In this document: positions 9,186 to 63,859 of the stretch, one piece after another
Layout: each line of letters begins with the position of its first letter
Numbering within the stretch: position 1 is the stretch's first letter
IMG/VR virus record: IMGVR_UViG_3300009158_000031
Span: 124,001-188,000 of that record
Length of the DNA: 64,000 nt
Reading direction: 5' to 3' (one strand)
Made by a program: the position numbers and the translations under genes
The notes under the pieces: generated by a model
What the model was told of the DNA's origin: nothing
What the model saw: the letters and a program-made list of their open reading frames with translations, nothing else
Databases searched by the model: none

Positions 9186-9449
9186 ATGAAAAACTACATA
9201 AACACATTTGAAGAGTTCTTAAATGAATCAATTAACGAAAATGTTTGGGCAGATATAACTAAATCAGCAAAACCTACTAAAGGTCCTTGGACTCTAGTAT
9301 CATCTGATAATAAAAAAGTTTTAGCCCAGAGCACAACTGATAATATACACATGCTTCCTGCTCATTTTGAATCACTGAAACTAAAATTTCCAAAATCAAG
9401 TATTCATATAGAAAGTGCTTCCGGTGAAGTAATTTGGAAAATGAAATAA
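9186..9449 (+). CDS. Putative internal head protein with capsid-targeting sequence (CTS 1)
   Basis: Starts MKNYINTFEEFLNESINE; compare the T4 IPII/IPIII CTS MKTYQEFIAE. Confidence 0.65.
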   Translation: MKNYINTFEEFLNESINENVWADITKSAKPTKGPWTLVSSDNKKVLAQSTTDNIHMLPAHFESLKLKFPKSSIHIESASGEVIWKMK

Positions 9450-9454
9450 TCAAT

Positions 9455-9910
9455 ATGAAAAATTACATAAACACATTTGAAGGTTTCTTAAATGAAGTTC
9501 GATTAAATGAAGATAAAATGCCGGTAGTTTCGGACTTTAAAGCTAACCCAACCGTATTGGATGGTGTTAAAATTAAAAACCTAGCCGAAGAAAATCCTGA
9601 ACAGGTGTTCATTATAAAGAAGGAATATGGCAAATGGCCTGATGATATACTTGCTAAATACAGCAAAACAGAAACTTCGATAACTGAATTTCTACCAATC
9701 GATAAATATGCTACAATGACAAAGTTAGAGTACTTAGGTTCTATGGCTGAAGTTATTGATATGATGTTCGGAGCTGACGAATGGCCACCAGCTAAACAGA
9801 AAGAACTTGCAAATGAACCATACTTATCTACTAATAAACAAGGAGAAGTTATAATAGATGTTCAACGAGGAAATATCAGTAAGTTTGTAAAATTAGCAGA
9901 AAAAAAGTAA
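9455..9910 (+). CDS. Putative internal head protein (CTS 2)
   Basis: True start is ATG 9455: MKNYINTFEGFLNEVRLNE. Confidence 0.65.
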   Translation: MKNYINTFEGFLNEVRLNEDKMPVVSDFKANPTVLDGVKIKNLAEENPEQVFIIKKEYGKWPDDILAKYSKTETSITEFLPIDKYATMTKLEYLGSMAEVIDMMFGADEWPPAKQKELANEPYLSTNKQGEVIIDVQRGNISKFVKLAEKK

Positions 9911-9920
9911 TTTAACTAAT

Positions 9921-10526
9921 ATGAAAAATTACATAAACACATTTGAAGGCTTCTTAAATGAATCTAAATACAAAGGAAATATCTCAGGAGATTCTGCTGA
10001 ATATATTGCTAAAGAAATGTCACAATATGTTAAAGGCATAATTAAACAGCCTAATGATAATGTTACTTACTTCCATTTAAAAGATAAATCCGGCAAATCA
10101 AAAGTTATTAAAACCTTATTAGATGTTTATGGATTAGAAGCAGTAGATGGTGGAAATCAATTTTCTCCATCACCTACTATTAAATTTGATAACGATCAAC
10201 TTCTTGAATCCCTTAGATCAGGTCCTAATGATGCTAAAATATATCCCATTAAAAAAGGAAGTGATCCAGAAGATCTTCTTTCCGGTAGATCTAGAGGATC
10301 ATGGGTAAGTTCAAAAACCATTAATGATATATTAGACGTTTTTGGTAAGGAAATGACCATTTATAAAGGTGACGAAATCACAGAATTCCTTCAAGTTAAT
10401 AGCCGAGATAATAGTGACATATATAAAATAGTTAGACGAGATTTAAGAGGACCTAGAACGGTTGGTTATATCCCTTCATATTATCAGAATTTTGACCAAA
10501 CCGAAGAAATAAACAATACTCGTTAA
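9921..10526 (+). CDS. Putative internal head protein (CTS 3)
   Basis: MKNYINTFEGFLNES; a possible second internal site at QLLES. Confidence 0.65.
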   Translation: MKNYINTFEGFLNESKYKGNISGDSAEYIAKEMSQYVKGIIKQPNDNVTYFHLKDKSGKSKVIKTLLDVYGLEAVDGGNQFSPSPTIKFDNDQLLESLRSGPNDAKIYPIKKGSDPEDLLSGRSRGSWVSSKTINDILDVFGKEMTIYKGDEITEFLQVNSRDNSDIYKIVRRDLRGPRTVGYIPSYYQNFDQTEEINNTR

Positions 10527-10527
10527 T

Positions 10528-11010
10528 ATGAAAAACCACATAAACACATTTGAAGGATTCTTAAATGAAGCTCGATTAAATGAAAGCAAACCTGCTATGA
10601 TGTACTATGTAGTAGCCAAGGATGTCATTAAGGATAGAAGACTTAAAGTATATCCTGAAAACATCGAAAGACTTTTGAACAACTTACAAGCAGACGGACA
10701 TTTATCATATGATGCAACGATAACATCAGATGCAAAGAAAGATATTGAAAACGCATTAGATAAGTTAGACTTGAAAGGGAATGAATTGCTTTCATATGCA
10801 AGAAAAGGCATGAAGTACGAAAGTGAAGATGTTAATGAAGCCAATCAAATTAAAGTTGGAACTTTTGTTAGATACAAAAAAGACGAAGATTTTACTGGTG
10901 GTAAGATCAAATCTATAAGTTCTGGTAAAGCAGAAATACATAATTGGGATGGTTCAACAACAGAACTTCCACTTAAAGATCTTGAATATATTGAGTCTTG
11001 GAATAATTAA
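10528..11010 (+). CDS. Putative internal head protein, two modules (CTS 4)
   Basis: MKNHINTFEGFLNEARLNE; internal EDVNE followed by a small SH3/Tudor-like beta module (IKVGTFVRY..GKIKSI..AEIHNWDG). Confidence 0.65.
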   Translation: MKNHINTFEGFLNEARLNESKPAMMYYVVAKDVIKDRRLKVYPENIERLLNNLQADGHLSYDATITSDAKKDIENALDKLDLKGNELLSYARKGMKYESEDVNEANQIKVGTFVRYKKDEDFTGGKIKSISSGKAEIHNWDGSTTELPLKDLEYIESWNN

Positions 11011-11013
11011 AAT

Positions 11014-11421
11014 ATGAAACCTATCAAACTATATAAAGAGTTTATTAATGAGGCAAAAGACGTTGATTCGGCAATGAAGAAAATCGATGATTTGCCAAAA
11101 GGATCAACCTTTGAAGATGCCAAAAGAATAGATCGTATTTTTGATATCAGTAAACATAGTTGGAGTGAGGTTGTGGAAACTTTTGAAAAGAATCAAAAAT
11201 CCGCAAAGATTAAACCGATAAATATAAAAGACATACAAATAACTCAACCAAATATCCAGAGCAATAAAGTGAAAGCCATGATTGAGAAATTTGATAAATT
11301 ACCTACAATTAATGCAGTTCAATTTCCGGATGGAATATCCATATATGATGGACATCATCGTCTATTAACTGCTTGGTCAATAGGAGAAACACGAATCAAA
11401 GTTAATCTTGTAAAAATATGA
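11014..11421 (+). CDS. CTS-bearing ParB/Sulfiredoxin-fold protein (CTS 5)
   Basis: MKPIKLYKEFINE, then INIKDIQITQPNI and IYDGHHRLLTA (ParB/Srx DGxHR motif). Confidence 0.7.
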   Translation: MKPIKLYKEFINEAKDVDSAMKKIDDLPKGSTFEDAKRIDRIFDISKHSWSEVVETFEKNQKSAKIKPINIKDIQITQPNIQSNKVKAMIEKFDKLPTINAVQFPDGISIYDGHHRLLTAWSIGETRIKVNLVKI

Positions 11422-11648
11422 AACACCTACACACATACAAAGAGTTCTTATTCGAGTCAACGATTTCCGAAATGAAGATAACTTCAGTTGGCGTTAAAGA
11501 GATTCTTAAGAAGCTTTATGACGATGCTAAACTTACAAAAGCATTACATTTTAAAAACTTCCGAGATGCACTCGATTCTATTCTTGGATATAGTCAAACG
11601 GAATTAGAAGAATTAGAAACAGAGATAAAAGAACTAGAGCACGCTTAA
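11418..11648 (+). CDS. Putative internal head protein (CTS 6)
   Basis: MKHLHTYKEFLFESTISE. Confidence 0.6.
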   Translation: MKHLHTYKEFLFESTISEMKITSVGVKEILKKLYDDAKLTKALHFKNFRDALDSILGYSQTELEELETEIKELEHA

Positions 11649-11670
11649 GATAATTTAAAAAATAAAAAAC

Positions 11671-12501
11671 ATGAAACATACACAAACATTCAAAGAGTTC
11701 TTAAATGAACAAGAAGAGATACTTAATGAAGATAGTTCTCTTGCACTTATGGTAATACTGCAAGCGGCTATAGTTAATGGACTTCTAATAGGTCAAATGG
11801 CGGCTAGTGGTGGTGGAGATGGCTTTCATCCTATCGATGATTTAAAAGCTTGGTGGGCGAAACGTAAAAAAGATAAAGCTGTAAAAAGTATTGTTGATAA
11901 ATTAAAAGAAGATCCTGAAGTTTTAGCCTTTTTGAAAATGTCAAATTGGGCACAAAAAGGAAAATGGTATAAACTTATTGAACCTAAACTTAATGACGAA
12001 GAGAAAAAATATCTAAAAAGTATTTCAAGAACTCCATTTATGAATGAGGAAGTTAATGAAAATTCCGCAATCCTTCTTGATCTTTCTGATAAGCAGTTGG
12101 CACTTTCTATAAAGGCTAAATTACCAGCCAAGTATAAAAAAGATACGAAGACTTTAATATACAATGCTCCATATTCAATGGTTTCTCATGGTGCTAAACT
12201 TACAAACCTTCCAACTCCTTCACGAGTATATCAATTGGAAAAAATGAATGAAACTTATAGAGGATCTGATAATTGGATATCTTTATCTTCATTAGCTATT
12301 GTACAAGATACAACCAATCAAGTTACTTTTGTAATTGTATATGAAGAATTTGATCCAATTCAATTTGATGAAATAAAATCAAATAAAGATTTGTACAAAG
12401 AAGAGGATTATAAAGACGAAAAAGATTTGCTTAAAAAGATGCAAACTTGGTTTGCTTATTCTGAAAAGGTCTTTAAAGAAGTAATAGAAGATCACTCATA
12501 A
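11671..12501 (+). CDS. Putative internal head protein, two modules (CTS 7)
   Basis: MKHTQTFKEFLNEQEEILNE; hydrophobic segment LALMVILQAAIVNGLLIG; internal FMNEEVNE linker. Confidence 0.6.
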   Translation: MKHTQTFKEFLNEQEEILNEDSSLALMVILQAAIVNGLLIGQMAASGGGDGFHPIDDLKAWWAKRKKDKAVKSIVDKLKEDPEVLAFLKMSNWAQKGKWYKLIEPKLNDEEKKYLKSISRTPFMNEEVNENSAILLDLSDKQLALSIKAKLPAKYKKDTKTLIYNAPYSMVSHGAKLTNLPTPSRVYQLEKMNETYRGSDNWISLSSLAIVQDTTNQVTFVIVYEEFDPIQFDEIKSNKDLYKEEDYKDEKDLLKKMQTWFAYSEKVFKEVIEDHS

Positions 12502-12512
12502 AAAAACATAAT

Positions 12513-12989
12513 ATGAAACATATACTCACATTCAAAAACTTCTTAAACGAGGAAAGAGTTTATGGAATGTTCAATGATTCTCAAGGAAAACCATCTAAAC
12601 TTTCACAAGAGATTTTAGATATTTGTCTAAAAGCACTACCTAAATATGTAATAGATAATATTGAATCAGTTGAAGCTTCCGGTTATTCTAAGACAAATTT
12701 AGCATCACCTCCTACGGTTAGTAATAAAGGTCAATCAAGAGGTGAAAATGATTATACGACTATTGTTCTAATATTCAAAAATCCAATGGGAAAATCTAAA
12801 ACAACTGAATTGACGGTTGGATTAAGAAAAAGAACTTCTGGACCAGGAACTGGTTATCTTGCGGTTAAACCTACTGCAAATGGTCATTATGTTTTACCTG
12901 AACATAGTGCCGCAATTGAATTTTATGATGCAGCGCCTGAAAGTTTAGCGGATTTATATAAGAGTACACTAGAAAAATTAATGAAATAA
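12513..12989 (+). CDS. Putative internal head protein (CTS 8)
   Basis: MKHILTFKNFLNEE. Confidence 0.65.
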   Translation: MKHILTFKNFLNEERVYGMFNDSQGKPSKLSQEILDICLKALPKYVIDNIESVEASGYSKTNLASPPTVSNKGQSRGENDYTTIVLIFKNPMGKSKTTELTVGLRKRTSGPGTGYLAVKPTANGHYVLPEHSAAIEFYDAAPESLADLYKSTLEKLMK

Positions 12990-12990
12990 T

Positions 12991-13353
12991 ATGAAACATA
13001 TACCAACATTCGATAATTTCCTAAATGAAGGAACCATCATGATTTTTCACTACTCAAAGAAATCTTCAGAGATTGATGGTGACGTGAAAGAATTACAGAA
13101 GAAAGCTCAAGAATTTATTAAAATCGCAAGAGACAAAGATTACAATATATCTTCTAACGATTCCGTACTTTATTTTCCAAATTTTAAATGGGCAGGAGGT
13201 AAACAAATCTTTGGACCATCATTAGGTATTAAAGCAGGATCAGAAACAATGCTAATTAATCCAATAGGCTCTGATAAAATAATCAAGATTAGCGAAGGCT
13301 TGCTTGTTCGTTTTGTAAAAGACGGCAGAATCGAATCATATAATTTATACTAA
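12991..13353 (+). CDS. Putative internal head protein (CTS 9)
   Basis: MKHIPTFDNFLNEG. Confidence 0.65.
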   Translation: MKHIPTFDNFLNEGTIMIFHYSKKSSEIDGDVKELQKKAQEFIKIARDKDYNISSNDSVLYFPNFKWAGGKQIFGPSLGIKAGSETMLINPIGSDKIIKISEGLLVRFVKDGRIESYNLY

Positions 13354-13354
13354 T

Positions 13355-13603
13355 ATGAAACATATACTCACATTCAAAAACTTCTTAAATGAAGGATTCA
13401 AGAAACCTTATAGCGAAAAAATGAGCCTTGAGGATTTTTCTGCTATAGAAGTTGGAAGTGAGGTTCTTTATGCTGGAGCAACTTACGAAGTGGTTAACAA
13501 CGATGGTGCAACTCTTCAATTAAAACCGGCTAAAGGTGCTAATGGTAAAGCGACTAAAGTTAATTTCTCAATGTTTAATGTTGCTGGAGCAATCCGCGAT
13601 TAG
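13355..13603 (+). CDS. Putative internal head protein (CTS 10)
   Basis: MKHILTFKNFLNEG; SH3-like cargo (IEVGSEVLYAGATYEVV). Confidence 0.65.
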   Translation: MKHILTFKNFLNEGFKKPYSEKMSLEDFSAIEVGSEVLYAGATYEVVNNDGATLQLKPAKGANGKATKVNFSMFNVAGAIRD

Positions 13604-36581: not shown

Positions 36582-36586
36582 TAATC

Positions 36587-36916
36587 ATGTCAGAAGAAAC
36601 ACAAGATCAAAATGACGGAACTTGGTCAGGTCTAAAGAAAACTTTAATAGGAACTCTAACCACAGTTATTGCTGGCGGAGGAATCTGGTTATCTACTACT
36701 CTATTTGGTGGTGGACACGAAGATAAAGAAGAAACTAAAACCGAGCAAGCTGCACCAGCACCAGTTGTAATTAATGTACAACAAAATCAAGAGAATACTC
36801 AAAAACAACAAAACAATGGTGGTACCACTACTATCATCAAAGAAAGAGTTATAGAGAAAGCTCCTGCTGAAAAGAAAGAAGAAAAGAAAAAAGAATCTGA
36901 GGATGCTCCTTGGTAA
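36587..36916 (+). CDS. Single-TM membrane protein
   Basis: TLIGTLTTVIAGGGIWLSTTLFG helix; low-complexity exported tail. Confidence 0.6.
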   Translation: MSEETQDQNDGTWSGLKKTLIGTLTTVIAGGGIWLSTTLFGGGHEDKEETKTEQAAPAPVVINVQQNQENTQKQQNNGGTTTIIKERVIEKAPAEKKEEKKKESEDAPW

Positions 36917-36935
36917 TTAAAAAAATTAAAACAAA

Positions 36936-37232
36936 ATGGCTAAATTACAAAACACCAAACCTGGATTCTTTAAGAGAATGTTTATGGATGATAACGATAT
37001 TAATGAAAAATCTATCGTTGGATTTTGTGCTTTCATTGTGATGGTTATTGCATTTGGAGTTGATATTTATACCGGTTTCAAAGGTATGCCTTTCGAGATT
37101 AATGAATTCATTTTTGATGGATTTATGGTTATTACTTTAGGTGCATTTGGTATCGCTTCAGTTGATAAGTACTTAACCGGAAAGAATAAAAATGAGAGTT
37201 CATCATCTAATGAAGAACCGCCTATTGAATAA
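36936..37232 (+). CDS. Two-TM membrane protein
   Basis: SIVGFCAFIVMVIAFGVDI and IFDGFMVITLGAFGIA helices. Confidence 0.6.
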   Translation: MAKLQNTKPGFFKRMFMDDNDINEKSIVGFCAFIVMVIAFGVDIYTGFKGMPFEINEFIFDGFMVITLGAFGIASVDKYLTGKNKNESSSSNEEPPIE

Positions 37233-37242
37233 ACCAAAATTT

Positions 37243-37962
37243 ATGAAAGCGATTATAATTTCTATATTGCTATTATTTTTTGCTCAAGCAAGTATTGCTC
37301 AGATTGGTACTATAAAATCTGAGCAATATCAAGCTGAGTTTGAAAAGAAGCAATCTCTTGATGCATTACCAGAATATACTGATACAGTTAAAGTTCCCAT
37401 TCAAATTCTTAAAATTGGAATCAATTCAGAATTGTATGAGATGTACCCTGAATTGAAAGATAAAAGAGTTGGTTTAGGTGTAACTAATATTGTTCTAGAA
37501 TATCTTGAATATACTAATCGTTTTGTATTCACTGAAGATAAACTTGAAATTAAAGAACGTATGGTTCAGCAATTTAAAGCATCTGATAAAGGATTTACTG
37601 AAAATAAAATAGACGGTAGAGGAAAGATCAAACTCGCTAAATATTTTGTTTATATTGAGGTCTATGATTTTTCTGTATCTGATGATGAAGTTGTAAAAAT
37701 TAATGGCGAATCAAAAACCACTCAAATAACTCGTTTAGGTTTACAAATTAAATTTGTGGATGCTGAGACTGGTGAAATTATTATGGGATCCGGTCTTGGT
37801 GAAGCATCAACTATTAAGACGGTTTCTATTTTAGATGGAGTTGATGATAGTGAAATTAAGTTCAATCAATCACACATTGGTATAACTACCAAGAAATCTC
37901 TTGAAACGGCATCTTCTAGAATTGTTTCGAGAATGATTAAAAAAGGCATATTCAAATCGTAA
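37243..37962 (+). CDS. CsgG/HfaB-like exported protein
   Basis: Signal peptide from ATG 37243 (MKAIIISILLLFFAQASIAQ); GLGVTNIVLEYL..RFVFTE, YFVYIEVYDFSV, LQIKFVDAETGEII..G.G follow the CsgG pattern. Confidence 0.75.
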   Translation: MKAIIISILLLFFAQASIAQIGTIKSEQYQAEFEKKQSLDALPEYTDTVKVPIQILKIGINSELYEMYPELKDKRVGLGVTNIVLEYLEYTNRFVFTEDKLEIKERMVQQFKASDKGFTENKIDGRGKIKLAKYFVYIEVYDFSVSDDEVVKINGESKTTQITRLGLQIKFVDAETGEIIMGSGLGEASTIKTVSILDGVDDSEIKFNQSHIGITTKKSLETASSRIVSRMIKKGIFKS

Positions 37963-39726
37963 ATGTACATTAGATCAATTATATTCTTTATTGCCTTTTG
38001 GTTCACGTCAATAGCAAGTTATGGTCAGTCTTTTAATTATTCATATACTGATCCTTGTACAGGTGTAGTCAAGACAATACCGGTTTCTACTAATGGAATA
38101 ACGGTAACCTATTACGGCCAAATCCATACATTTCAACCTACTGATTTTTACAATGGAGGTTTTGAAAGTTGGGCTCAAACGGTATACTCATCCTTTGGAA
38201 ATAATAATCCATGTGCTTCTATTGTAGGTCTTCCTACTGGAATTAATATAGCACAAAACACAGCAATCAATTTCTTAAGTATTATAAATTCTCTATCTGC
38301 TATTAGTGATTTATCTTCTTTAGGTGGAGCTACTAATTTATTATCAGGAATTGGAAGTGTTTCCGGTTCTACTAGTAATAAAAAGAAAGATGATAAAAAG
38401 AGTGGATCCGCTCAAACAGACGGAACAACCACAACTACTGAAGGTAGCGTATCAACTCCTAATGGAGGATCAACAACATCAGGTTCATCAGGAAATTCCG
38501 GATCCACTCAAACGAATGGAACTGCTACAAATACGGAAGGAAGCGTATCAACTCCAAGTGGAGGTTCAACAACTTCAGGATCTTCTACTAATCAAGGAAC
38601 TGGAAATACAAATCCAACTCAACCTACTCAAACAGGAGGTCAAACAACTCAACCACCGGTAGGTTCTACTCAAAATCAAACTGGCACAAATGGAAATAAT
38701 AACACGAGTAATACCAATAGTAATTCTAGTGGGTCTAGTAATACTAGCAATAATACAAACAATACTCAACCTACGACTGGTACAAATCAAACACAAAACC
38801 CTACCACAACCCAAAATGGAAATTCACAGAGTGGAAGCACAAATTCAAATAGCGGCAATGCTAACCAAAATGGGAGTGGATCCTCTAATAGCAATGGATC
38901 GAGCAACCAAAATGGTAGCGGATCAAACTCAAACGATGGATCTTCTCAAGAAGGTAAAAGTGGAAGCGGAAATACTCAAGGAAGCGAAACGCCTAAAGAA
39001 GAAGGTGGAAAAACCAACCTAGTAGGTGGAGCCGTTTCGACTTTAGCAAATTCAACTAGTTCTGGTAAAGCCGCTTCAACTGAAAGTAGAAAACCCACAA
39101 TTCTAGGAAGTAGTGATTTTGTTGGATTTAATTTTAAAGATTCCGATATTGATCGAGGAGCTAAATTTACAGGAGGTTATACTTCATTAAGATGGGATGG
39201 ACAAAGATCCCATGGAATTTTAGTTGATTATACAACTGCTCTTAAAGGACCAAATATTACTGGATTTTATGCAATCATAAAGAAGAAGAGAATTGATTTA
39301 ATATCAACTACGCTTACATTAGGATTTGATCGAAAGACTTCGGTTTATGGAACTTTGGCTCTTGGTCAAATGTGGAATATTGATAAAAAGAAAAAACTTA
39401 AAGCAGTATACATGTTAACCGGATCATTTGGTTCTGTATATGGCGAAGAATTTGTTGGTACTGCTGCAATTGCCGGTGTAATGTACGATTGGAAAATTTC
39501 TAAACGAATAGATATTAAATTAATGGGGCTATATGTCTATGCTCCATATGTTAGTTATTATAATGACATACTACTAAAATCTCCTCATGTAGTTCTTCCT
39601 ATCATTGGAACTAACATTGGACTTACGAAGAGATTTAAGTTAAACATAAATGGTGGTGGAGCTTGGGCATTACAAGAAAATGCATTAAACTACACCATAA
39701 TGATGGGTACTAGATTTTTATTATGA
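37963..39726 (+). CDS. Outer-membrane beta-barrel protein with a long Ser/Thr/Asn/Gly-rich stalk
   Basis: Signal peptide; about 220-aa low-complexity linker with a 31-aa duplication (TEGSVSTPNGGSTTSGSS / TEGSVSTPSGGSTTSGSS); amphipathic strands ending NYTIMMGTRFLL. Confidence 0.65.
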   Translation: MYIRSIIFFIAFWFTSIASYGQSFNYSYTDPCTGVVKTIPVSTNGITVTYYGQIHTFQPTDFYNGGFESWAQTVYSSFGNNNPCASIVGLPTGINIAQNTAINFLSIINSLSAISDLSSLGGATNLLSGIGSVSGSTSNKKKDDKKSGSAQTDGTTTTTEGSVSTPNGGSTTSGSSGNSGSTQTNGTATNTEGSVSTPSGGSTTSGSSTNQGTGNTNPTQPTQTGGQTTQPPVGSTQNQTGTNGNNNTSNTNSNSSGSSNTSNNTNNTQPTTGTNQTQNPTTTQNGNSQSGSTNSNSGNANQNGSGSSNSNGSSNQNGSGSNSNDGSSQEGKSGSGNTQGSETPKEEGGKTNLVGGAVSTLANSTSSGKAASTESRKPTILGSSDFVGFNFKDSDIDRGAKFTGGYTSLRWDGQRSHGILVDYTTALKGPNITGFYAIIKKKRIDLISTTLTLGFDRKTSVYGTLALGQMWNIDKKKKLKAVYMLTGSFGSVYGEEFVGTAAIAGVMYDWKISKRIDIKLMGLYVYAPYVSYYNDILLKSPHVVLPIIGTNIGLTKRFKLNINGGGAWALQENALNYTIMMGTRFLL

Positions 39727-40715
39727 GAAAGTTTATCACCACAATAATTGCCATCTTGTTAACCGGTGCTACATATGCACAAGCGTTTACATATTCAGGC
39801 TACATATATAACGCAAATGGTACAGGAGCAGTAAATGTTCCAGTAAAGTTATATAAGAGAACAACTCCAAATATAACTGGTTTTACGTCTCAAACAAACT
39901 ATAATGGTCACTCATATTATAGATCAACCGGTTCTATGACGTGGACTGATGCAAAACAAGCTTGCATAAATATGAATGGGCACTTGGTTACAATTGCTAA
40001 CGCCTCTGAACAATCATTCGTATTTAATACATGGCCATCAGGATGGATTGGATTTACTGATGAATCGGTTGAAGGTACATTTGTATGGGTAACTGGAGAA
40101 CCTGTAAATTATACCAATTGGAATCCTGGTGAACCAAATAATGCAGGCAATGAAGATTATGCTCAATTTGTTAGTGGCGGTAAATGGAATGATCTACCTA
40201 ACACATCTTTACCTTATGTAATTGAATTTGATTATATTGTAACCACTACTCCATGGGTTTTGCATCAAACCGTATACACAAACGCTAGTGGATATTATTC
40301 ATTCAATCAATTGACAAATCCATCAGTTGAATGGTATATTCGATATGATGCACCAACACCAATCACAATACATCAAACATCTGATTTAAGTACAATTGGA
40401 AATATCGTATTAGGAGTTACCACCAAGAAATCTTTACATTGGAATATGTTCGATGTGAATAATGATGGAAATATAACGATATCTGATGCATACTATGTGA
40501 GTGGAAAGAAAAACGGAATATTTGCAAGTTGGATTGGATCTCAATCATCAGCCTTATATACGCCAGCCCAATTTAATATTCTAAATACCGGAACTACTAA
40601 TTTAAAGGCAACATACCCTGGAGTAAGCTCATTTACAATATCAACTCCAGTGAATGGTGGATCTGCAAATTATTACCTAATTGCTCCAGGTTATGCTGGA
40701 CAAGTAACATACTAA
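39723..40715 (+). CDS. Secreted Ig-like/C-type lectin/dockerin-like protein
   Basis: Signal peptide; CTLD motifs MTWTDAKQAC, GHLVTI, WIGFTDE..EGTFVWVTGE..NYTNWNPGEPNN..EDYA..GKWNDL; FDVNNDGNITISDAY. Confidence 0.88.
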   Translation: MRKFITTIIAILLTGATYAQAFTYSGYIYNANGTGAVNVPVKLYKRTTPNITGFTSQTNYNGHSYYRSTGSMTWTDAKQACINMNGHLVTIANASEQSFVFNTWPSGWIGFTDESVEGTFVWVTGEPVNYTNWNPGEPNNAGNEDYAQFVSGGKWNDLPNTSLPYVIEFDYIVTTTPWVLHQTVYTNASGYYSFNQLTNPSVEWYIRYDAPTPITIHQTSDLSTIGNIVLGVTTKKSLHWNMFDVNNDGNITISDAYYVSGKKNGIFASWIGSQSSALYTPAQFNILNTGTTNLKATYPGVSSFTISTPVNGGSANYYLIAPGYAGQVTY

Positions 40716-40721
40716 ATATTT

Positions 40722-41177
40722 ATGAAAAATCTACTTCTTATATTACTTCTGCTTCCAATGTTATCATTCGGACAAATCAATTCATGTGTTCATGTTGATT
40801 CGGTTTATTCAACCGCTAAATATAAGGATATGGGTAATCGTGATATTCGCTTTGGTATTAGACAAATGACCGAGGATATTCTTTCTGAAAAATATTGTAT
40901 CAATTCATCATCTCCGGATGTAGATGTAGAGGTATTTTTCTTTGGTTTACCTAGAAGTACTTATAGAATAATTGGAGTAGAGAAAACTAATCAAATAACT
41001 CAAGTTGGCATTCGTATTTATTATAATGGTGTTAAATACGAAGCTTATGGAGAATCTGATACTGAAATACGAACTGTGATGTTAGAGATTGTTGAAGGAC
41101 AGACTCCATTTTCAAAGATGACGGTTTCTAATGCGATAAAAAAAGCAATAGAATCATGCGTATCTCAAATGCCTTAA
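40722..41177 (+). CDS. Exported protein, possibly CsgG/LptE-like fold
   Basis: Signal peptide; alpha/beta pattern ending in helix VSNAIKKAIE. Confidence 0.45.
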   Translation: MKNLLLILLLLPMLSFGQINSCVHVDSVYSTAKYKDMGNRDIRFGIRQMTEDILSEKYCINSSSPDVDVEVFFFGLPRSTYRIIGVEKTNQITQVGIRIYYNGVKYEAYGESDTEIRTVMLEIVEGQTPFSKMTVSNAIKKAIESCVSQMP

Positions 41178-41617
41178 TTATATTCTTACTCTTTATACCA
41201 TCATTCATATTTGGACAAATTAAAGTTCAAGATGTTGGTGACGGATGGCAAAGCAAAGTAGATTCTGCTATTACTCTTATACAGAAAACTGATACCATCG
41301 CCTATCAAATCTTAATAGAAAATTGTAAGGATGTGGAATTTATTATTGGTAAGTACTCTACTACTAAACCTCCTTATACGATTGCTATAACCACTAAAGA
41401 TATGAATCTAAATTCCATCAATAATATAGCAGCCGTGTTAATACATGAATCATATCATCTTTTTATATACAATAACAAAATAGTATATTCACCAACCGAT
41501 GAAGAAGCCACTTGCTATGAAAGAGAATATGAATTTCTTTGTAAACTCCCTAATGTTGAAGATTGGCTATTTCTTAATGCCATGAACAACATCATCCTTT
41601 TCCGAAATCGGAAGTAA
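41156..41617 (+). CDS. Exported zincin-like metallopeptidase
   Basis: Signal peptide; IAAVLIHESYH (HExxH) followed by EEATCY. Confidence 0.65.
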   Translation: MRISNALIIFLLFIPSFIFGQIKVQDVGDGWQSKVDSAITLIQKTDTIAYQILIENCKDVEFIIGKYSTTKPPYTIAITTKDMNLNSINNIAAVLIHESYHLFIYNNKIVYSPTDEEATCYEREYEFLCKLPNVEDWLFLNAMNNIILFRNRK

Positions 41618-58864: not shown

Positions 58865-60178
58865 ATGAAAAGATTATTAAAGTATAAAGACTTTGTTGAA
58901 GTTTTAAGCGAAGGTGCTAGACTTCAAGCATTGGTCGATGATCTTCCTTTGTTTGAAGGTGGTGCATACGGTCACCTATCACATCCTTTCGAAGACATGA
59001 ATTTGACTATGGCAGATTTGCATACGATGATACAAGATACTGTTAATGGATCTTTTGGTCCTGAGAATTTTGTTCAAGAGAAAACTGATGGTCAGCAAAT
59101 ATCAATATCTTGGAAGGATGGTAAATTGATTGCGGCAAGAAATAAAAGTCATCTAAAGAATGCTGGCGAAGCCGCATTAGATTCTTCTGGTATTGCTTCT
59201 ATGTTTGCTGGTCGTGGTGATATCGAAATTGCCTATAATGCAGCAATGGAAGATCTTCAAAAATCTATTGGCGGTTTATCAGATAAAGATAAATTAGCCT
59301 TCTTTGCTAATGGTAAGAAATTCGTTTCATTAGAAGTTATTACGCCTATCACACAAAATACAGTTCCTTATGGTCAAAATATGCTTGTATTCCATGGAGT
59401 ACTTGAATATGATGAATCCGGAAATGTTATCGATGAAGATAAACAAGCTGCTAGAAATCTTGGTAAATCAATTGCTGATGCGAATCTAGCTGCACAGAAA
59501 ATGTTCTTTGTTAGAGGACCTCAAGATATGGATATTAAACCATTTCCTAATACCGCAAAAAGATCTTCATATTACGAAAAGAAATACAACGAAATCCTTA
59601 CTACTTGTGGATTAACTGATGCATCTACCGTATTTGATTATGCAATAGGTATGGCTAGATTAGTACTTGAAGAAGAAGCTAAATCTGCAAAGGTTGAAAT
59701 CCCTGCATCTGCAATCGATGGTTTGGCTGCACGTATAGCAGATATTAATAAGTCTTTTTCGGTTTCGTTAATCAAGAAAGAACTTGGTGATAATGCTGAT
59801 TGGTATTTTGATCTAGAAAAGAAAAGTGCCAAACAACTTAAACGTAAAATTTATGCTCCTCTTGAATCGCTTTTCCTTGAAATAGGAACAGAATTCATGA
59901 AGAATATGTCTACCTTCCTATCTGCAAATCCTACGGAAGCAGCCGAAGCAATGAAAAATGAAATTGATTCTACTATCGCAAAGATTCGTACAAATGGTGA
60001 CGAAAAAGACGTAGAAAAATTAGAACACGAATTAACTAGAGTTACTGCTGCTGGTGGTGTCGAAGGATTGGTTCCTACTGAAGGAATTACATTCGTTTAT
60101 AAAGGTAAACTTTATAAGTATACTGGAATTTTCGCTCCACTACATCAAATACGCTCTATTTTAGCTTATAAAAAATAA
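58865..60178 (+). CDS. CTS-bearing ligase-like (covalent nucleotidyltransferase) protein
   Basis: True start ATG 58865: MKRLLKYKDFVEVLSE..LFEGG; GHLSHPFED; QEKTDG (KxDG motif I); PTEGITF..YKYTG (motif IV/V-like). Confidence 0.62.
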   Translation: MKRLLKYKDFVEVLSEGARLQALVDDLPLFEGGAYGHLSHPFEDMNLTMADLHTMIQDTVNGSFGPENFVQEKTDGQQISISWKDGKLIAARNKSHLKNAGEAALDSSGIASMFAGRGDIEIAYNAAMEDLQKSIGGLSDKDKLAFFANGKKFVSLEVITPITQNTVPYGQNMLVFHGVLEYDESGNVIDEDKQAARNLGKSIADANLAAQKMFFVRGPQDMDIKPFPNTAKRSSYYEKKYNEILTTCGLTDASTVFDYAIGMARLVLEEEAKSAKVEIPASAIDGLAARIADINKSFSVSLIKKELGDNADWYFDLEKKSAKQLKRKIYAPLESLFLEIGTEFMKNMSTFLSANPTEAAEAMKNEIDSTIAKIRTNGDEKDVEKLEHELTRVTAAGGVEGLVPTEGITFVYKGKLYKYTGIFAPLHQIRSILAYKK

Positions 60179-60191
60179 AAACAAAGTAATT

Positions 60192-60368
60192 ATGCAAAAG
60201 TACGAAGAAATCAAAACTTTAATCTCATCAATCGATGGTGACGTAGACAAATTTTATAATAAAGGAAATAAGTCTGCTGGAACTCGTATCCGTAAAGCTA
60301 TGCAAGATTTGAAAAAACTTGCTCAAGACTTACGTGTTGATGTTCAAGAATCGAAAAGTGCTGAGTAA
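60192..60368 (+). CDS. Histone H1-like protein, Hc1 family (58 aa, not in track)
   Basis: MQKYEEIKTLISSIDGDVDKFYNKGNKSAGTRIRKAMQDLKKLAQDLR; KF..KGNK.AGTR.RK is the Hc1/Bacteroidota histone-H1-like signature. Confidence 0.85.
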   Translation: MQKYEEIKTLISSIDGDVDKFYNKGNKSAGTRIRKAMQDLKKLAQDLRVDVQESKSAE

Positions 60369-60374
60369 TCCTAA

Positions 60375-60830
60375 ATGACCGGATTGTTCAAAATTAATGA
60401 AGATTCTGCCTTTGGACCGGGAATGATGTTTGGCATCCCTGGTCCTGGTCCAAAAGCGGATTCTCCAAAACAACCTTCTGATAAAAAGAAGGAAAAAGGA
60501 ATTACCCCGAAACAAATGAAGAAGACTATACCATCATTCAAAAAATTTAACGAAGGTTTTGCTTACGTTAAAGATCCTTTCAGAGAAGGTGAAAGGATGT
60601 TCAGTAAAGATATTAAAATAGACAATGTTGCTGTTATTAATATCAATGGTTCTATTGATGGATTAGATGCTACACACACAGCAATCGTATCCGTTATAAC
60701 TAGTACTATGGATAACTTCGGCGAAGATCTTGGTAAAGAACGAATCATATTAACACAAAAAGATTTTACCACTAAAGCAGAGGCTGAAAGCTTTTTGAAG
60801 AAAATTGAAAAAGAAATTATCTACAAATAA
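60375..60830 (+). CDS. Hypothetical protein with N-terminal FKINE and internal CTS-like IPSFKKFNE
   Basis: Sequence motifs as stated. Confidence 0.55.
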   Translation: MTGLFKINEDSAFGPGMMFGIPGPGPKADSPKQPSDKKKEKGITPKQMKKTIPSFKKFNEGFAYVKDPFREGERMFSKDIKIDNVAVININGSIDGLDATHTAIVSVITSTMDNFGEDLGKERIILTQKDFTTKAEAESFLKKIEKEIIYK

Positions 60831-61417
60831 TGAAGAAATTTAAAGAATTCGTTACAGATATTCTGATATTTGAAAAGATTGATGGAAAGGAAGTTTGTAT
60901 ATTTCCTGGACGTTTTCAACCTTTTCATAATGGACATATTGAAGCAATACATCGAACAGCAAAAGCTTTCGGAGTTCCTGTTATCCCGGTACAAATCAAA
61001 TCAAAGAACGAAAATTCACCTTTCCCAGATTCTCTTCTAGAAAAGATTGGTAAGGCCATGATTAAAGAATTTCCTTTCATTGAAGATTATGTACTTTATC
61101 CTCCTGATAAGAAAACTGTAGTACCTCAAATGGTTAAATTCCTTCAAGAAAAGGGTTATGATCCAATTGGTATTGGTTGTGGAAGTGATCGTTTAAGAGA
61201 TTATGAACGTCAAGTTGAATATCTAACATCACCGAAATCGGATGTTCAAGTTAATAAATTTTCGGTTGCAATGGTTGATGAACGAAGAGCCGATGGTCCT
61301 TCAGGAACAAGAGTTCGTGAAGCACTTATGAATGATGATAAAGAGGCATTCGAAAAAGCTACACCAAGATCACTACATCCTTTCTATAAAGAGCTACAAA
61401 AATACCTTAAAAAATAA
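60830..61417 (+). CDS. CTS-bearing HIGH-superfamily (cytidylyl/adenylyl) nucleotidyltransferase
   Basis: MKKFKEFVTDILIFE; FPGRFQPFHNGH (HxGH); GSDR; SGTRVRE. Confidence 0.85.
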   Translation: MKKFKEFVTDILIFEKIDGKEVCIFPGRFQPFHNGHIEAIHRTAKAFGVPVIPVQIKSKNENSPFPDSLLEKIGKAMIKEFPFIEDYVLYPPDKKTVVPQMVKFLQEKGYDPIGIGCGSDRLRDYERQVEYLTSPKSDVQVNKFSVAMVDERRADGPSGTRVREALMNDDKEAFEKATPRSLHPFYKELQKYLKK

Positions 61418-61433
61418 AAATCATAATATAAAT

Positions 61434-62957
61434 ATGAAACCTATTAAAAACTACAACGAATTCATTAATGAAGCATGGATTGGTCCATTCGTATTCAATG
61501 AAGACATGACCGATGATGAACTAAAGGCTATATACCAAGGTGCATTAGATGGATTTGCTTATTGGCAAAAAGGATTTGAATATCCAAAAGCCGATTACAA
61601 AAAGGCATATACTGAAATTGGAAAGATTCTAAAGAAAAGAGGAGTTAATGTTGATGAATCTGTTAATGAAGGATCTAACGACGAAATGGTAAAACGGAGT
61701 TGTGTCGAAAGACTTTCTCAATTCTTTAGAGTTAGTCCAAACGCATTATCACATTTCAAATTTGATGGAACCGATAACATTAAAGCTTTAACAAAAGCTC
61801 TTAATTCTACATCAGATGAAGGAACCGAGGCATACTATAAAGTAGCAATCCGAGTTGGAAAACAAGATGCCGGTATCGAAGAATCTATCGAGGAATCAGC
61901 TAAATGTCCTCCTATATACATTCCGGTATTATCTAATATCGATCATACTAGAATAATCAAATGGATGGATATTCATTTTGATAGTCATAAATGGGATATG
62001 AAGAAATCCGGTGCTGGTTTTGAAATCGATGTTGAAAAACTATCTAGTCAAGAACAAGATGATTTATTAAAATATTTACACTCACAAGATTATTTAGAAG
62101 AATCTGTTAATGAAGCTTGGAGTAATATAGACACCGACAAAGCTGCCGATCTAATCAATAAAGAAATTGGAGTTAATCCTGGTTATTTCTTTATTGGCGA
62201 TGAAGATTTATGCATCAAATTTGATAAATTATGGACTGAAAAGAAATACAAAGTAGCTCTTAATATGTTATTTTTTATTGAAAATCTAAAAGATCTTAAA
62301 GACTTCATAAAACAAAACCAAAACGAATCGGTTAATGAAGCAGTATCACCAGAAGTACATCGTATGGTTAATAAATTTGTAACCGGTATGGCTGATAAAT
62401 ATGATTATTCTTTACAAGATGCAGTTTATGCAATACTAGACGTTTTAAAAAGTCAAAAATATAAAGGATTAAAAGAATCTGTTAATGAAGGTGAAACTTT
62501 AATATTTGATGAGATCGGAGAAAACCTAACCAAACTTCAGGATCAAATAGATGCAATGCTTAAATGGGAAATCACCGATCAAAAATGGATCGTTGCACTT
62601 AAAACAATTCAATCTGCCTGTTCTAAATTGGAAGATACTGTCGCTAAAGCTGATCAGAAATTAGGTGCTATTGAATATAATGAATCCATTAGTGAAGGTC
62701 TTTTAAAATTAGATGAAGGTGCTGTTAAACAATTTGAGATCGATTATAAAGACATGGAAAGTAGTATCAAACGAGGTATTGGTTGGATTGATCCTGAATA
62801 TGTGGCTGAAACTTGGGAGAATTCTTCAGATACTATTGATTATGAAATAGTTAGAAATGAAATTCTTACTCGTCTAATTAAAGCCGATCTTCTTTATACA
62901 TCACTAGATGGAGAAACTAAAGGTAAAAGAATTACCAACATAAGTCAAATTAAATAA
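61434..62957 (+). CDS. CTS-bearing multi-module polyprotein with ES(V/I)(N/E/S)E linkers
   Basis: True start ATG 61434: MKPIKNYNEFINE; linkers DESVNE, EESIEE, EESVNE, NESVNE, KESVNE, NESISE. Confidence 0.75.
   Translation: MKPIKNYNEFINEAWIGPFVFNEDMTDDELKAIYQGALDGFAYWQKGFEYPKADYKKAYTEIGKILKKRGVNVDESVNEGSNDEMVKRSCVERLSQFFRVSPNALSHFKFDGTDNIKALTKALNSTSDEGTEAYYKVAIRVGKQDAGIEESIEESAKCPPIYIPVLSNIDHTRIIKWMDIHFDSHKWDMKKSGAGFEIDVEKLSSQEQDDLLKYLHSQDYLEESVNEAWSNIDTDKAADLINKEIGVNPGYFFIGDEDLCIKFDKLWTEKKYKVALNMLFFIENLKDLKDFIKQNQNESVNEAVSPEVHRMVNKFVTGMADKYDYSLQDAVYAILDVLKSQKYKGLKESVNEGETLIFDEIGENLTKLQDQIDAMLKWEITDQKWIVALKTIQSACSKLEDTVAKADQKLGAIEYNESISEGLLKLDEGAVKQFEIDYKDMESSIKRGIGWIDPEYVAETWENSSDTIDYEIVRNEILTRLIKADLLYTSLDGETKGKRITNISQIK
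61656..62490 (+). repeat. 16-bp linker repeats gaatc(t/g)gttaatgaag at 61656, 62100, 62325 and 62475
   Basis: Three identical copies and one with a single substitution; degenerate copies at 61881 and 62682. Confidence 0.92.
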
Positions 62958-63859
62958 TGCTAAAATTTAATCAATTTGTTAACCTGATTCTTAATGAAGG
63001 AGGTAATGCGATTGAGGATGCTCGTCCTATTTTGCAATCTGAAATAGATGCAACGTATGCATATGTTATTAAAAACATATATCCTCTTATTGGTCTTGCC
63101 GAAGATTTTGCTAAACCAATAGGATCTTTTAAGAAAAAAGCACCTGATCAAACATCTGGTGATATCGATATTGCCGTTCTTGCTGATAGAATTGCCGGAG
63201 AAAATGGAATTGATTTATCTCAGGTTCTTGAATTCATCGCATCTAAATTGAGTGATTATTCTCCGGTCGTTAGTAAAGGGTTTCAACAAGTTTCTATAGG
63301 TGTTCCAATTGAAGGTGATAAGAAAAAAGGTATTGCACAAATTGATTTGATGCTAACAGATAATCTGAATTTTTCCTCCTTCATGTATCATTCACCAGAC
63401 TTTACTCAAGCAGAATCCAAATATAAAGGACTTTACCGTAATATTCTACTAATGAATATCATTAGCAATTCGAAACGAGAAACTACCAAGCTAACCGACA
63501 AAGGTGAAATTGAAGAATATCGTTCATATGTACTTCGTCTAAATCAAGGTGTTGTTGCGGTAACCAAATCGTTTATAGGTAAGAAAGGGTTAGTTAAGAA
63601 TCCTACATTACTCAACGATCAAGATAAATTTATGTCTAATACTCCAGAAGTTATTGCGGAATTGGCATTCGGTCCGGATGTTCCCATTTCAGAAATAATG
63701 ACTTTTGAAGATACTTGGAGACATACAATGGATTCTAAATTTATTCACCAAGATAAATTAGATGCAATTCTAAAAGATTTCAGAACTAGATTACTTGCTG
63801 CTAAAGTTCCTTTCCCTATTGAATGTGTAGAACAATACCCAAATATATTTACATCATGA
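62957..63859 (+). CDS. CTS-bearing DNA polymerase beta-superfamily nucleotidyltransferase
   Basis: MLKFNQFVNLILNEGGNA; PIGSFKKK..SGDIDIAV (GS..DxD); AQIDLM. Confidence 0.8.
   Translation: MLKFNQFVNLILNEGGNAIEDARPILQSEIDATYAYVIKNIYPLIGLAEDFAKPIGSFKKKAPDQTSGDIDIAVLADRIAGENGIDLSQVLEFIASKLSDYSPVVSKGFQQVSIGVPIEGDKKKGIAQIDLMLTDNLNFSSFMYHSPDFTQAESKYKGLYRNILLMNIISNSKRETTKLTDKGEIEEYRSYVLRLNQGVVAVTKSFIGKKGLVKNPTLLNDQDKFMSNTPEVIAELAFGPDVPISEIMTFEDTWRHTMDSKFIHQDKLDAILKDFRTRLLAAKVPFPIECVEQYPNIFTS

What the first reader, a model, noticed from the sequence alone, without database searches (positions are those of the whole stretch)
61434..62957. Seven-module polyprotein strung on ESVNE linkers: probable protease-released bundle of injected peptides
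Seen: after the CTS (MKPIKNYNEFINE), unrelated 50-80 aa modules are separated by DESVNE, EESIEE, EESVNE, NESVNE, KESVNE and NESISE(GLLKLDE). Four linkers share the 16-bp sequence gaatc(t/g)gttaatgaag (61656, 62100, 62325, 62475). The same xNE site ends the leaders and appears inside CTS genes 10528 (EDVNE) and 11671 (EEVNE). Established: T4 gp21 cleaves after (I/L/F)xE. Inference: one targeting signal delivers about seven small effectors that the prohead protease releases, a viral polyprotein strategy rarely described in bacteriophages. The DNA repeats would allow module swapping.
Basis: partly seen in the sequence, partly recalled or inferred. Interest (0 to 1): 0.82.

Follow-up and report, generated by a model that had tools for sequence, protein, structure and literature searches.

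The report
Cleavable string of phage head cargo
A jumbo freshwater phage encodes a 507-residue protein made of seven unrelated small domains joined by copies of its head protease's apparent cutting site, so one packaging signal probably loads several small proteins into the capsid.

Summary
ORF 61434-62957 has a 13-residue leader and seven mutually unrelated 50-86 aa modules. They are joined by six ES(V/I)(N/S/E)E linkers, against 0.009 expected by chance.

The modules are independent units. Each recurs in every order in hundreds of metagenomic phage proteins, and also alone behind a leader. Close relatives differ by whole-module gains and losses bounded exactly at linkers.

Residues before a module start are nearly fixed: Glu at P1 (88-100%), Asn at P2, Val/Ile/Leu at P3. 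This holds whether a leader or a linker precedes.

The same contig encodes a T4 gp21-family (Peptidase_S77) prohead protease fused to a scaffold. The motif is concentrated in that scaffold and in the first 70 residues of the capsid protein. It is absent from the mature capsid protein in 80 related phages. The leader resembles the T4 capsid targeting sequence.

Best reading: a protease-cleavable precursor of several T4-IP-like internal head proteins.

Cleavage, packaging, injection and module function remain untested. The modules are acidic, unlike the basic T4 IPs, and match no known fold or family.

Verdict: a new variant of a known kind, defining a large unannotated phage protein family.

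The parts
61434..62957 (+). Polyprotein ORF, 507 aa, 58.1 kDa, pI 4.8 (the end coordinate includes the stop codon)
   Evidence: 96%-identical full-length homologue P0001
61434..61472 (+). Leader MKPIKNYNEFINE, a CTS-like signal that ends in the INE| site
   Evidence: Compare the T4 CTS MKTYQEFIAE. The same leader type occurs on about 14 other genes of the window.
61473..61670 (+). Module M1 (aa 14-79), ending with linker 1 ESVNE at 61656-61670
   Evidence: 99 BLAST hits in family proteins at any position. P1 is Glu in 71 of 71 distinct upstream contexts. An environmental contig diverges exactly at 61670.
61671..61895 (+). Module M2 (aa 80-154), ending with linker 2 ESIEE at 61881-61895
   Evidence: A 12-nt deletion variant of this linker occurs in P0003 and in an RNA-run contig.
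61896..62114 (+). Module M3 (aa 155-227), ending with linker 3 ESVNE at 62100-62114
   Evidence: In P0008 this module follows the leader directly (FFNE|SAKCPP)
62115..62339 (+). Module M4 (aa 228-302), ending with linker 4 ESVNE at 62325-62339 (TCG serine codon)
62340..62489 (+). Module M5 (aa 303-352), ending with linker 5 ESVNE at 62475-62489
62490..62696 (+). Module M6 (aa 353-421), ending with linker 6 ESISE at 62682-62696
   Evidence: P1 is Glu in 91% of contexts
62697..62954 (+). Module M7 (aa 422-507). It begins with a 7-residue spacer GLLKLDE| (62697-62717), a second tandem site, before the conserved GAVKQF core.
   Evidence: AF2 gives pLDDT 93.9 and pTM 0.85 for the module alone. There are 108 hits. 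P1 is Glu in 88% of contexts before GAVK.
9186..13603 (+). Hotspot of nine small leader-bearing genes directly after the tail-tube gene. Their mature parts recur as internal modules of polyproteins in other phages.
62957..63859 (+). Next gene, a 300-aa nucleotidyltransferase-like protein with leader MLKFNQFVNLILNE|G. In P0052 it is fused behind module M1.

Best explanation
The ORF is a precursor polyprotein of internal head proteins.

Proposed mechanism:
1. The 13-residue N-terminal leader, a relative of the T4 capsid targeting sequence, brings the whole 58-kDa chain into the scaffolding core of the prohead.
2. The phage's gp21-family (Peptidase_S77) prohead protease cuts after Glu in each [V/I/L]-N-E|(A/G/S) junction. 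These junctions are the leader end, the six linkers and the extra LDE| site.
3. Cutting frees seven autonomous 5.7-9.9 kDa domains. They are too large and too folded to leave the shell, so they stay with the DNA.
4. The domains are presumably ejected into the host, like T4 Ip1-3.

The junction peptide is also where lineages exchange, insert and delete modules. The gene therefore behaves as a cassette array drawn from a pool of more than 100 module families.

Shown: the modular architecture, the junction logo, the equivalence of leader and linker, the presence of the protease, and the motif's concentration in canonical protease substrates.

Inferred: targeting, cleavage, retention, injection, and anti-defence or another early function.
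For: (1) Architecture and statistics.

(2) Modules are evolutionary units.
- 476 clusters (50% identity) match at E<=1e-3, with match borders at module borders.
- Modules occur alone in 65-117 aa proteins and inside proteins up to 1131 aa.
- They occur in every order.
- Near-identical relatives differ by whole cassettes bounded by ES(V/I)NE.
- An environmental DNA contig departs from the window exactly after linker 1.

(3) Junction logo.
- P1 is Glu in 100%, 91% and 88% of contexts for M1, M6 and M7.
- P2 is Asn in 52-69%.
- P3 is V/I/L in about 85%.
- P1' is mostly Ala or Gly for M1 and M7, but is varied for M6.
- ESVNE occurs 139 times in the family, against ESVNQ, ESVND and ESVNK 0 times each.

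(4) Leader and linker are interchangeable.
- M1 follows a leader 21 times and an internal linker 76 times.
- P0008 joins the leader directly to M3.
- Five single-module leader genes of the window are internal modules elsewhere.

(5) Protease.
- The same contig, about 20 kb upstream, carries Portal_T4, a 633-aa Peptidase_S77-scaffold fusion and a Gp23-type capsid protein.
- The fusion is 34% identical to T4 gp21.
- It keeps His and Ser at the two positions where wild-type T4 gp21 has them and the crystallised chain 5JBL has Ala.

(6) The motif marks canonical substrates. In 80 related phages, [VILFY]NE[AGSN] occurs per 1000 aa at:
- 25.5 in the first 70 aa of the capsid protein;
- 0 in the other 40,608 aa of the capsid protein;
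- 8.2 in scaffold parts;
- 0.17 in protease domains.
A conserved AEL.RVNE|(A/S).GF follows the protease domain, and exact ES[VIL]NE occurs in scaffolds.

(7) In the window, [VILF]NE[AGS] occurs at 5.7 per 1000 aa in leader proteins against 0.23 elsewhere.

(8) The T4 CTS MKTYQEFIAE resembles MKPIKNYNEFINE. T4 Alt is cut at ITE-6 and LTE-619. T4 Ips share only the leader and are injected anti-restriction proteins.

(9) Cultured relative PAU has the same kind of leader ending KLNE|A on an annotated internal capsid protein, and KLNE|S in its capsid protein N-terminus.

(10) Structure. M7 alone gives pLDDT 93.9. In the full-length model confidence drops below 50 at linkers 1-3, all six linkers are coil, and pTM is 0.28.

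(11) Codons at leaders and linkers vary synonymously, so selection acts on the peptide.
Against: No proteomic or biochemical datum exists, because no cultured phage carries a member.

The modules are acidic (pI 4.4-5.1, with M5 at 6.8), whereas T4 IPs are highly basic. Retention with DNA and the IP analogy are therefore less certain.

The second half of the full-length AF2 model is low confidence, so burial of linkers 4-6 is not excluded by that model alone.

No module has a recognisable fold or family, so 'effector' is an analogy.

The gene lies about 60 kb from the head genes, among accessory enzymes.

Linker 2 (SIEE|S) and linker 6 (SISE|G) depart from the N-at-P2 consensus.
Confidence: 0.6

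Rival explanations
1. It is an uncleaved multi-domain ('polyvalent'-type) internal or virion protein. The ES(V/I)NE peptides would be only flexible spacers and scars of fusions between neighbouring leader-bearing genes. Only the N-terminal leader, if anything, would be removed.
For: There is no direct evidence of cleavage. Fusion of leader genes clearly happens. Polyvalent injected proteins with 2-15 domains are known.
Against: A spacer or scar does not explain invariant Glu at P1 and an aliphatic residue at P3, irrespective of the flanking modules. It also does not explain the same motif in scaffolds and in the capsid propeptide, with total avoidance in the mature capsid protein. Tandem double sites such as FLNE|SINE| and SISE|GLLKLDE| are also unexplained.
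Confidence: 0.2
2. It is a scaffold or core filler. The chain would be loaded into the prohead core, cut at the linkers and expelled or degraded like T4 gp22, gp67 and gp68. It would then have an assembly role and would not be delivered cargo.
For: The composition is acidic, as in the T4 core proteins gp67 and gp22. Multi-site cutting is typical of scaffolds.
Against: The modules are compact globular domains rather than coiled coil. Their number and identity differ between near-identical phages. They also occur as stand-alone accessory leader genes in a hotspot. The phage already has a 633-aa protease-scaffold. Folded domains of 6-10 kDa are the size of retained T4 IPI* and IPII* (own knowledge).
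Confidence: 0.12
3. The leader and xNE sites serve a process unrelated to the capsid, for example export or processing by another protease such as the ClpP-like gene downstream. Alternatively the 16-bp repeats are DNA-level signals.
For: A ClpP-like 175-aa gene lies about 4.4 kb downstream. Three of the four ESVNE linkers share identical codons, more than the 0.11 per-site expectation from codon bias.
Against: The motif is tied to the capsid protein N-terminus and to the scaffold in 80 phages. The leader resembles the T4 CTS. Across loci, linker codons roughly track background usage and all synonyms occur. The ATG inside the repeat is out of frame (sequence). The family is essentially absent from 185,579 cellular genomes.
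Confidence: 0.05

Closest known systems
T4 internal proteins Ip1-3 and Alt: CTS-targeted head cargo trimmed by gp21
   Same: - A short N-terminal leader of the same type (T4 MKTYQEFIAE against MKPIKNYNEFINE), ending in aliphatic-x-Glu.
- A gp21-family protease is encoded.
- The bodies are small, unrelated and hypervariable and share only the leader.
- The genes cluster in hotspots.

   Different: - T4 IPs are single-body proteins, cut once next to the CTS. Here up to seven or more bodies hang on one leader, separated by repeated sites.
- The bodies are acidic, not basic.
- P2 is almost fixed as Asn.
- The host clade is a PAU/PTm1/megaphage-like jumbo phage lineage, not Tevenvirinae.
Multi-site processing of head and ejection proteins in phiKZ, 201phi2-1 and SPN3US (S80 proteases gp175 and gp245)
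   Same: A prohead protease cuts after Glu at several motif copies in one substrate, and many packaged ejection proteins are involved.
   Different: There, the multiple cuts mostly fragment propeptides for removal and leave one mature body. Here each inter-site segment is a conserved, autonomous, shuffled domain.
Polyvalent proteins of phages and conjugative elements (Iyer et al. 2017, PMC5512222)
   Same: Many unrelated domains sit in one polypeptide. They are predicted to be packaged and injected early, with domain shuffling driven by conflict.
   Different: Polyvalent proteins carry recognisable enzymatic and DNA-binding domains, often with MuF or portal anchors or embedded zincin peptidases. 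Here there is no known domain, the modules are tiny, a CTS-type leader is present, and a uniform external-protease site lies at every junction.
Polyproteins of eukaryotic RNA viruses
   Same: One translation product is cut by a virus-encoded protease at conserved junction motifs into independent products.
   Different: This is a dsDNA phage. The polyprotein is accessory cargo rather than the replication or structural core. Cleavage would occur inside the assembling capsid.

Membership tests
T4-type CTS-bearing internal head protein | N-terminal leader of about 10-14 aa resembling the CTS and ending in (L/I/V)-x-E | tested here: met
   MKPIKNYNEFINE against T4 MKTYQEFIAE. About 14 genes in the window share this leader type.
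T4-type CTS-bearing internal head protein | The genome encodes a gp21-family (Peptidase_S77) prohead protease | tested here: met
   L097:108-2009 scores 49.1 bits against PF03420 (cut-off 27). It is 34% identical to T4 gp21. His and Ser are kept at the positions that are Ala in the crystallised 5JBL chain.
T4-type CTS-bearing internal head protein | Protein present in the capsid and leader removed by the protease | not testable with these tools
   No cultured phage carries a member and no proteomic data are available.
T4-type CTS-bearing internal head protein | Highly basic mature protein | tested here: not met
   Module pI is 4.4-5.1, with M5 at 6.8. T4 IPs are described as highly basic.
T4-type CTS-bearing internal head protein | Single body cut once next to the CTS | tested here: not met
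   There are seven bodies and seven or eight candidate sites.
Protease-processed viral polyprotein | Segments are autonomous units | tested here: met
   Modules occur as stand-alone proteins and in every order. M7 alone gives pLDDT 93.9.
Protease-processed viral polyprotein | A conserved protease recognition motif at every junction, shared with the protease's known substrates | tested here: met
   Junction logo. The motif is enriched in the scaffold and the capsid propeptide and absent from the mature capsid protein. That this motif is what the protease recognises is inferred from its position, by analogy with T4.
Protease-processed viral polyprotein | Cleavage products demonstrated | not testable with these tools
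   Needs mass spectrometry or an in-vitro assay.
Polyvalent proteins (Iyer 2017) | Combination of recognisable enzymatic or DNA-binding domains, often with a MuF or portal anchor or an embedded peptidase | tested here: not met
   There are no significant Pfam or PHROG hits in the ORF (one sub-threshold Pfam hit, YqzH, E=0.077). Among ten long relatives the only hit is one DUF5824.
Scaffold or core protein (gp22/gp67/gp68-like) | Conserved, elongated or coiled-coil protein encoded with the head genes | tested here: not met
   The modules are globular. Their content varies among near-identical phages. The gene lies about 60 kb from the head module.

The most novel reading that the evidence does not exclude
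A whole clade of uncultured jumbo phages, probably of Bacteroidota-type hosts, keeps a combinatorial library of more than 100 families of small injected proteins. These are strung as beads on one capsid-targeting leader. A single five-residue peptide serves both as the prohead-protease release site and as the breakpoint for cassette exchange. This would be a phage counterpart of integron or polymorphic-toxin cassette systems for early-acting, possibly anti-defence, cargo.
Probability: 0.4. Interest if true: 0.85.

Novelty: new variant of a known kind. Interest (0 to 1): 0.72.

Why it matters
If the linkers are cut, this shows that phages can multiplex head cargo. One targeting signal and one gene would deliver a stoichiometric set of small proteins at the moment of DNA entry.

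It gives a rule that can be read from sequence: leader plus [VIL]NE| junctions. This rule predicts the mature N-termini of hundreds of unannotated proteins (476 clusters at 50% identity). It also marks them as candidate injected factors, the class that in T4 turned out to be specific inhibitors of type IV restriction.

It extends the T4 CTS and gp21 logic to a distant jumbo and megaphage lineage. It also offers natural, modular cleavable linkers for packaging foreign proteins into capsids.

Tried and rejected
- DNA and tblastn searches of the ORF, and of the 1131-aa relative P0225, against 50,697 phage records found nothing.
- P0025 matched only through a C-terminal domain shared with actinophage head-protein fusions.
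- Pfam, PHROGs, the ESM Atlas and Foldseek (PDB and BFVD) gave no function for the ORF or for module M7.
- A fragment-based MAFFT alignment for AF2 (A2) stacked all modules on top of each other and was discarded. A 15-row collinear alignment was used instead, so the M4-M6 part of the full model is uninformative.
- The first attempt to walk upstream failed because the window's first ORF is truncated. An exact-pattern scan and two look-ups then reached the head genes.
- Tenacibaculum phage PTm1 has the same terminase, sheath and tube order but no leader genes after the tube.
- T4-type late promoter TATAAATA: there are only 6 copies in the window, and the one at 61427 overlaps the start codon. 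It is not informative.
- A genome-contig scan with the M7 profile returned only two short doubtful matches.

Full report
**1. What is there**

The window is 33% GC, with all genes on the + strand. It is part of an uncultured freshwater jumbo-phage contig, IMG/VR 3300027733_000028 (207 kb). The same sequence occurs in a 254-kb contig.

It carries a T4-like large terminase, a 1083-aa tail sheath and a tail tube, and topoisomerase II. The nearest relatives are metagenomic megaphages, Sphingomonas phage PAU and Tenacibaculum phages PTm1 and pT24.

ORF 61434-62957 encodes 507 aa. The longer frame from 61332 overlaps the upstream gene and is not used by homologues.

After the leader MKPIKNYNEFINE, six ES(V/I)(N/S/E)E peptides cut the chain into pieces of 66, 75, 73, 75, 50, 69 and 86 aa.
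- Chance expectation for the motif is 0.009 copies. The maximum was 2 in 200,000 shuffles.
- The 16-mer shared by four linkers occurs only there in the window.
- The pieces are unrelated to one another.

**2. The pieces are independent modules**

An exhaustive HMMER search found 476 clusters at E<=1e-3. The matched stretches coincide with module borders, for example 75-153, 229-296, 344-416 and 425-507. They lie in proteins from 65 to 1131 aa.

BLAST of the seven modules against the 251 retrieved proteins shows every order and combination. Examples are M2-M6-M1, M7-M2, M6-M3-M2 and M3-M4-M5-M7, as well as single modules behind a leader.

An alignment of the closest relatives has M1 and M7 nearly identical. 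The differences are whole cassettes inserted, deleted or replaced exactly between ES(V/I)NE peptides.

In a lake metagenome, a contig follows the window up to 61670, the last base of linker 1, and then continues with unrelated sequence. A 12-nt deletion inside linker 2 is seen in a metatranscriptome contig and in P0003.

Cutting the 251 proteins at linkers gives 122 clusters of 30-120 aa segments.

Five of the window's own small leader genes (9186, 9921, 10528, 11671, 13355) have bodies that are internal modules of polyproteins elsewhere. The 300-aa enzyme-like gene that follows the ORF is fused behind M1 in P0052.

Module M7 modelled alone gives pLDDT 93.9 and pTM 0.85. The full-length model is poor overall (pLDDT 52.6, pTM 0.28). 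Its confident part, M1-M3, drops below 50 exactly at linkers 1-3, and all six linkers are coil.

**3. The junction is a conserved peptide, not a DNA signal**

I anchored on conserved module starts and read the residues before them:
- P1 is Glu in 71 of 71 distinct contexts for M1, in 91% for M6 and in 88% for M7.
- P2 is Asn in 52-69%, otherwise Asp, Thr or Ser.
- P3 is Val, Ile or Leu in about 85%.
- P1' is mostly Ala or Gly for M1 and M7, but is varied for M6.

The logo is the same whether an N-terminal leader or an internal linker precedes. For M1 this is 21 leaders against 76 linkers.

ESVNE occurs 139 times in 121,078 residues of the family. ESVNQ, ESVND and ESVNK never occur. Tandem sites are common, such as FLNE|SINE| and SISE|GLLKLDE|.

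Leader and linker codons vary synonymously within the window. Over 40 distinct sites in other loci they roughly follow background usage.

Three of the four ESVNE linkers in this ORF do share identical codons. The per-site expectation is 0.11. This is compatible with recent exchange, but it is not evidence that the DNA repeat is the functional element.

**4. The protease and its other substrates**

About 20 kb upstream on the same contig lie three head genes:
- Portal_T4;
- a 633-aa protein whose residues 22-136 match Peptidase_S77 (49 bits, cut-off 27);
- a Gp23-family capsid protein.

The protease part is 34% identical to T4 gp21. It keeps His and Ser at the two positions where wild-type T4 gp21 has them and the crystallised chain 5JBL has Ala.

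Its scaffold part carries RVNE|A directly after the protease domain. It then carries GLNE|G, KVNE|N, RYNE|A, SLNE|S and PINE|S. The capsid protein starts MYLINE|S.

Across 80 related phages fetched with a capsid-protein profile, [VILFY]NE[AGSN] occurs at these rates:

| Region | Occurrences per 1000 aa |
|---|---|
| First 70 aa of the capsid protein | 25.5 |
| Remaining 40,608 aa of the capsid protein | 0 |
| Scaffold parts | 8.2 |
| Protease domains | 0.17 |
| Other ORFs | 1.0 |

The capsid N-terminus has two conserved sites..LINE|A at about residue 8 and ..LNE|S at about residue 47. The second lies where T4 gp23 has its LTE|A propeptide site.

Scaffolds of several relatives contain exact ES[VIL]NE.

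In the window, [VILF]NE[AGS] is 25-fold denser in leader proteins than in the rest.

PAU, a cultured relative, has five head-cluster genes with an MKT(L/I).QLYE leader. Two of them end in KLNE|A, one of which is annotated as an internal capsid protein. Its capsid protein has KLNE|S near the N-terminus.

**5. Comparison with what is known**

- T4 internal proteins share only the CTS MKTYQEFIAE and are cut once beside it.
- All T4 internal head proteins reach the core through a CTS, and Alt is cut at ITE-6 and LTE-619.
- Ip1-3 are injected, specific inhibitors of GmrSD-type restriction.
- phiKZ and SPN3US proteases cut several motif copies, mainly to fragment propeptides.
- Polyvalent proteins combine many recognisable domains in injected proteins.

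I found no description of a leader plus an array of small unrelated bodies separated by prohead-protease sites. The library searched is incomplete, so this is not proof of absence.

**6. Verdict**

The mosaic, cassette-like nature of the gene is established, and so is the identity of leader ends and linker ends. That the junction is the S77 protease's site is a strong inference from where the motif sits in the capsid protein and the scaffold.

Packaging, cleavage, retention, injection and function are unproven.

Points against a simple IP analogy:
- the modules are acidic;
- they have no recognisable fold or family;
- the gene sits among leader-bearing accessory enzymes rather than head genes.

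I put 0.6 on the cleaved head-cargo polyprotein reading. I class it as a new variant of a known kind, and rate interest at 0.72.

Noticed in passing
window 9186-13603: Nine consecutive small genes start with MK(N/H/P)..F..F(L/I)NE directly after the tail-tube gene, like a T-even IP hotspot. Genes 10528 and 11671 contain internal EDVNE and EEVNE sites, which makes them two-module mini-polyproteins.
   Followed up: partly
window 17685-18566, 58865-60178, 60830-61417, 62957-63859; L097:7547-9052; L005:12420-13949: Larger, enzyme-like proteins also carry the leader, suggesting packaged enzymes in the manner of T4 Alt:
- a GT2-like protein;
- a ligase-like protein with a KxDG motif;
- a cytidylyltransferase-like protein;
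- an NTase-like protein;
- a RimK-type ATP-grasp protein;
- a 509-aa protein of unknown function.
The leaders of 58865 and 60830 are atypical (they end VLSE and LIFE).
   Followed up: partly
window 60192-60368: A 58-aa protein whose orthologue in L001 is annotated with PF07432, the Hc1 chlamydial histone-like domain. It could be a DNA-condensing protein.
   Followed up: no
L097:4487-7072 (same contig, about 17 kb upstream of the window): An 861-aa Lys/Ala/Glu-rich low-complexity protein lies two genes after the capsid gene. It ends with ...QFLINE at its extreme C-terminus and has internal SANE|A and PNE|S sites.
   Followed up: no
L097:12055-16239: A cluster of RNA repair and quality-control genes: a ligase-like gene, Ro/TROVE, SmpB, and a PolyA_pol/CCA-adding-type nucleotidyltransferase.
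   Followed up: no
L005:15890-16417 (about 4.4 kb downstream of the ORF): A ClpP-like 175-aa protease gene sits among metabolic genes. I considered it as an alternative protease and judged that unlikely.
   Followed up: partly
window 34659-41617: A run of genes with Bacteroidota-style signal or lipoprotein N-termini (MKKLL...FAQ). This is consistent with a Bacteroidota host.
   Followed up: no
P0025 residues 387-555: The C-terminal domain of a polyprotein relative matches parts of actinophage proteins annotated as capsid maturation protease or portal. This may be an effector domain shared with MuF-type fusions.
   Followed up: no
window 61057-63857 in run X13: Lake metatranscriptome contigs cover parts of the gene and its neighbours at about 90-97% identity. 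Relatives therefore appear to be transcribed in nature, although DNA carry-over is not excluded.
   Followed up: partly
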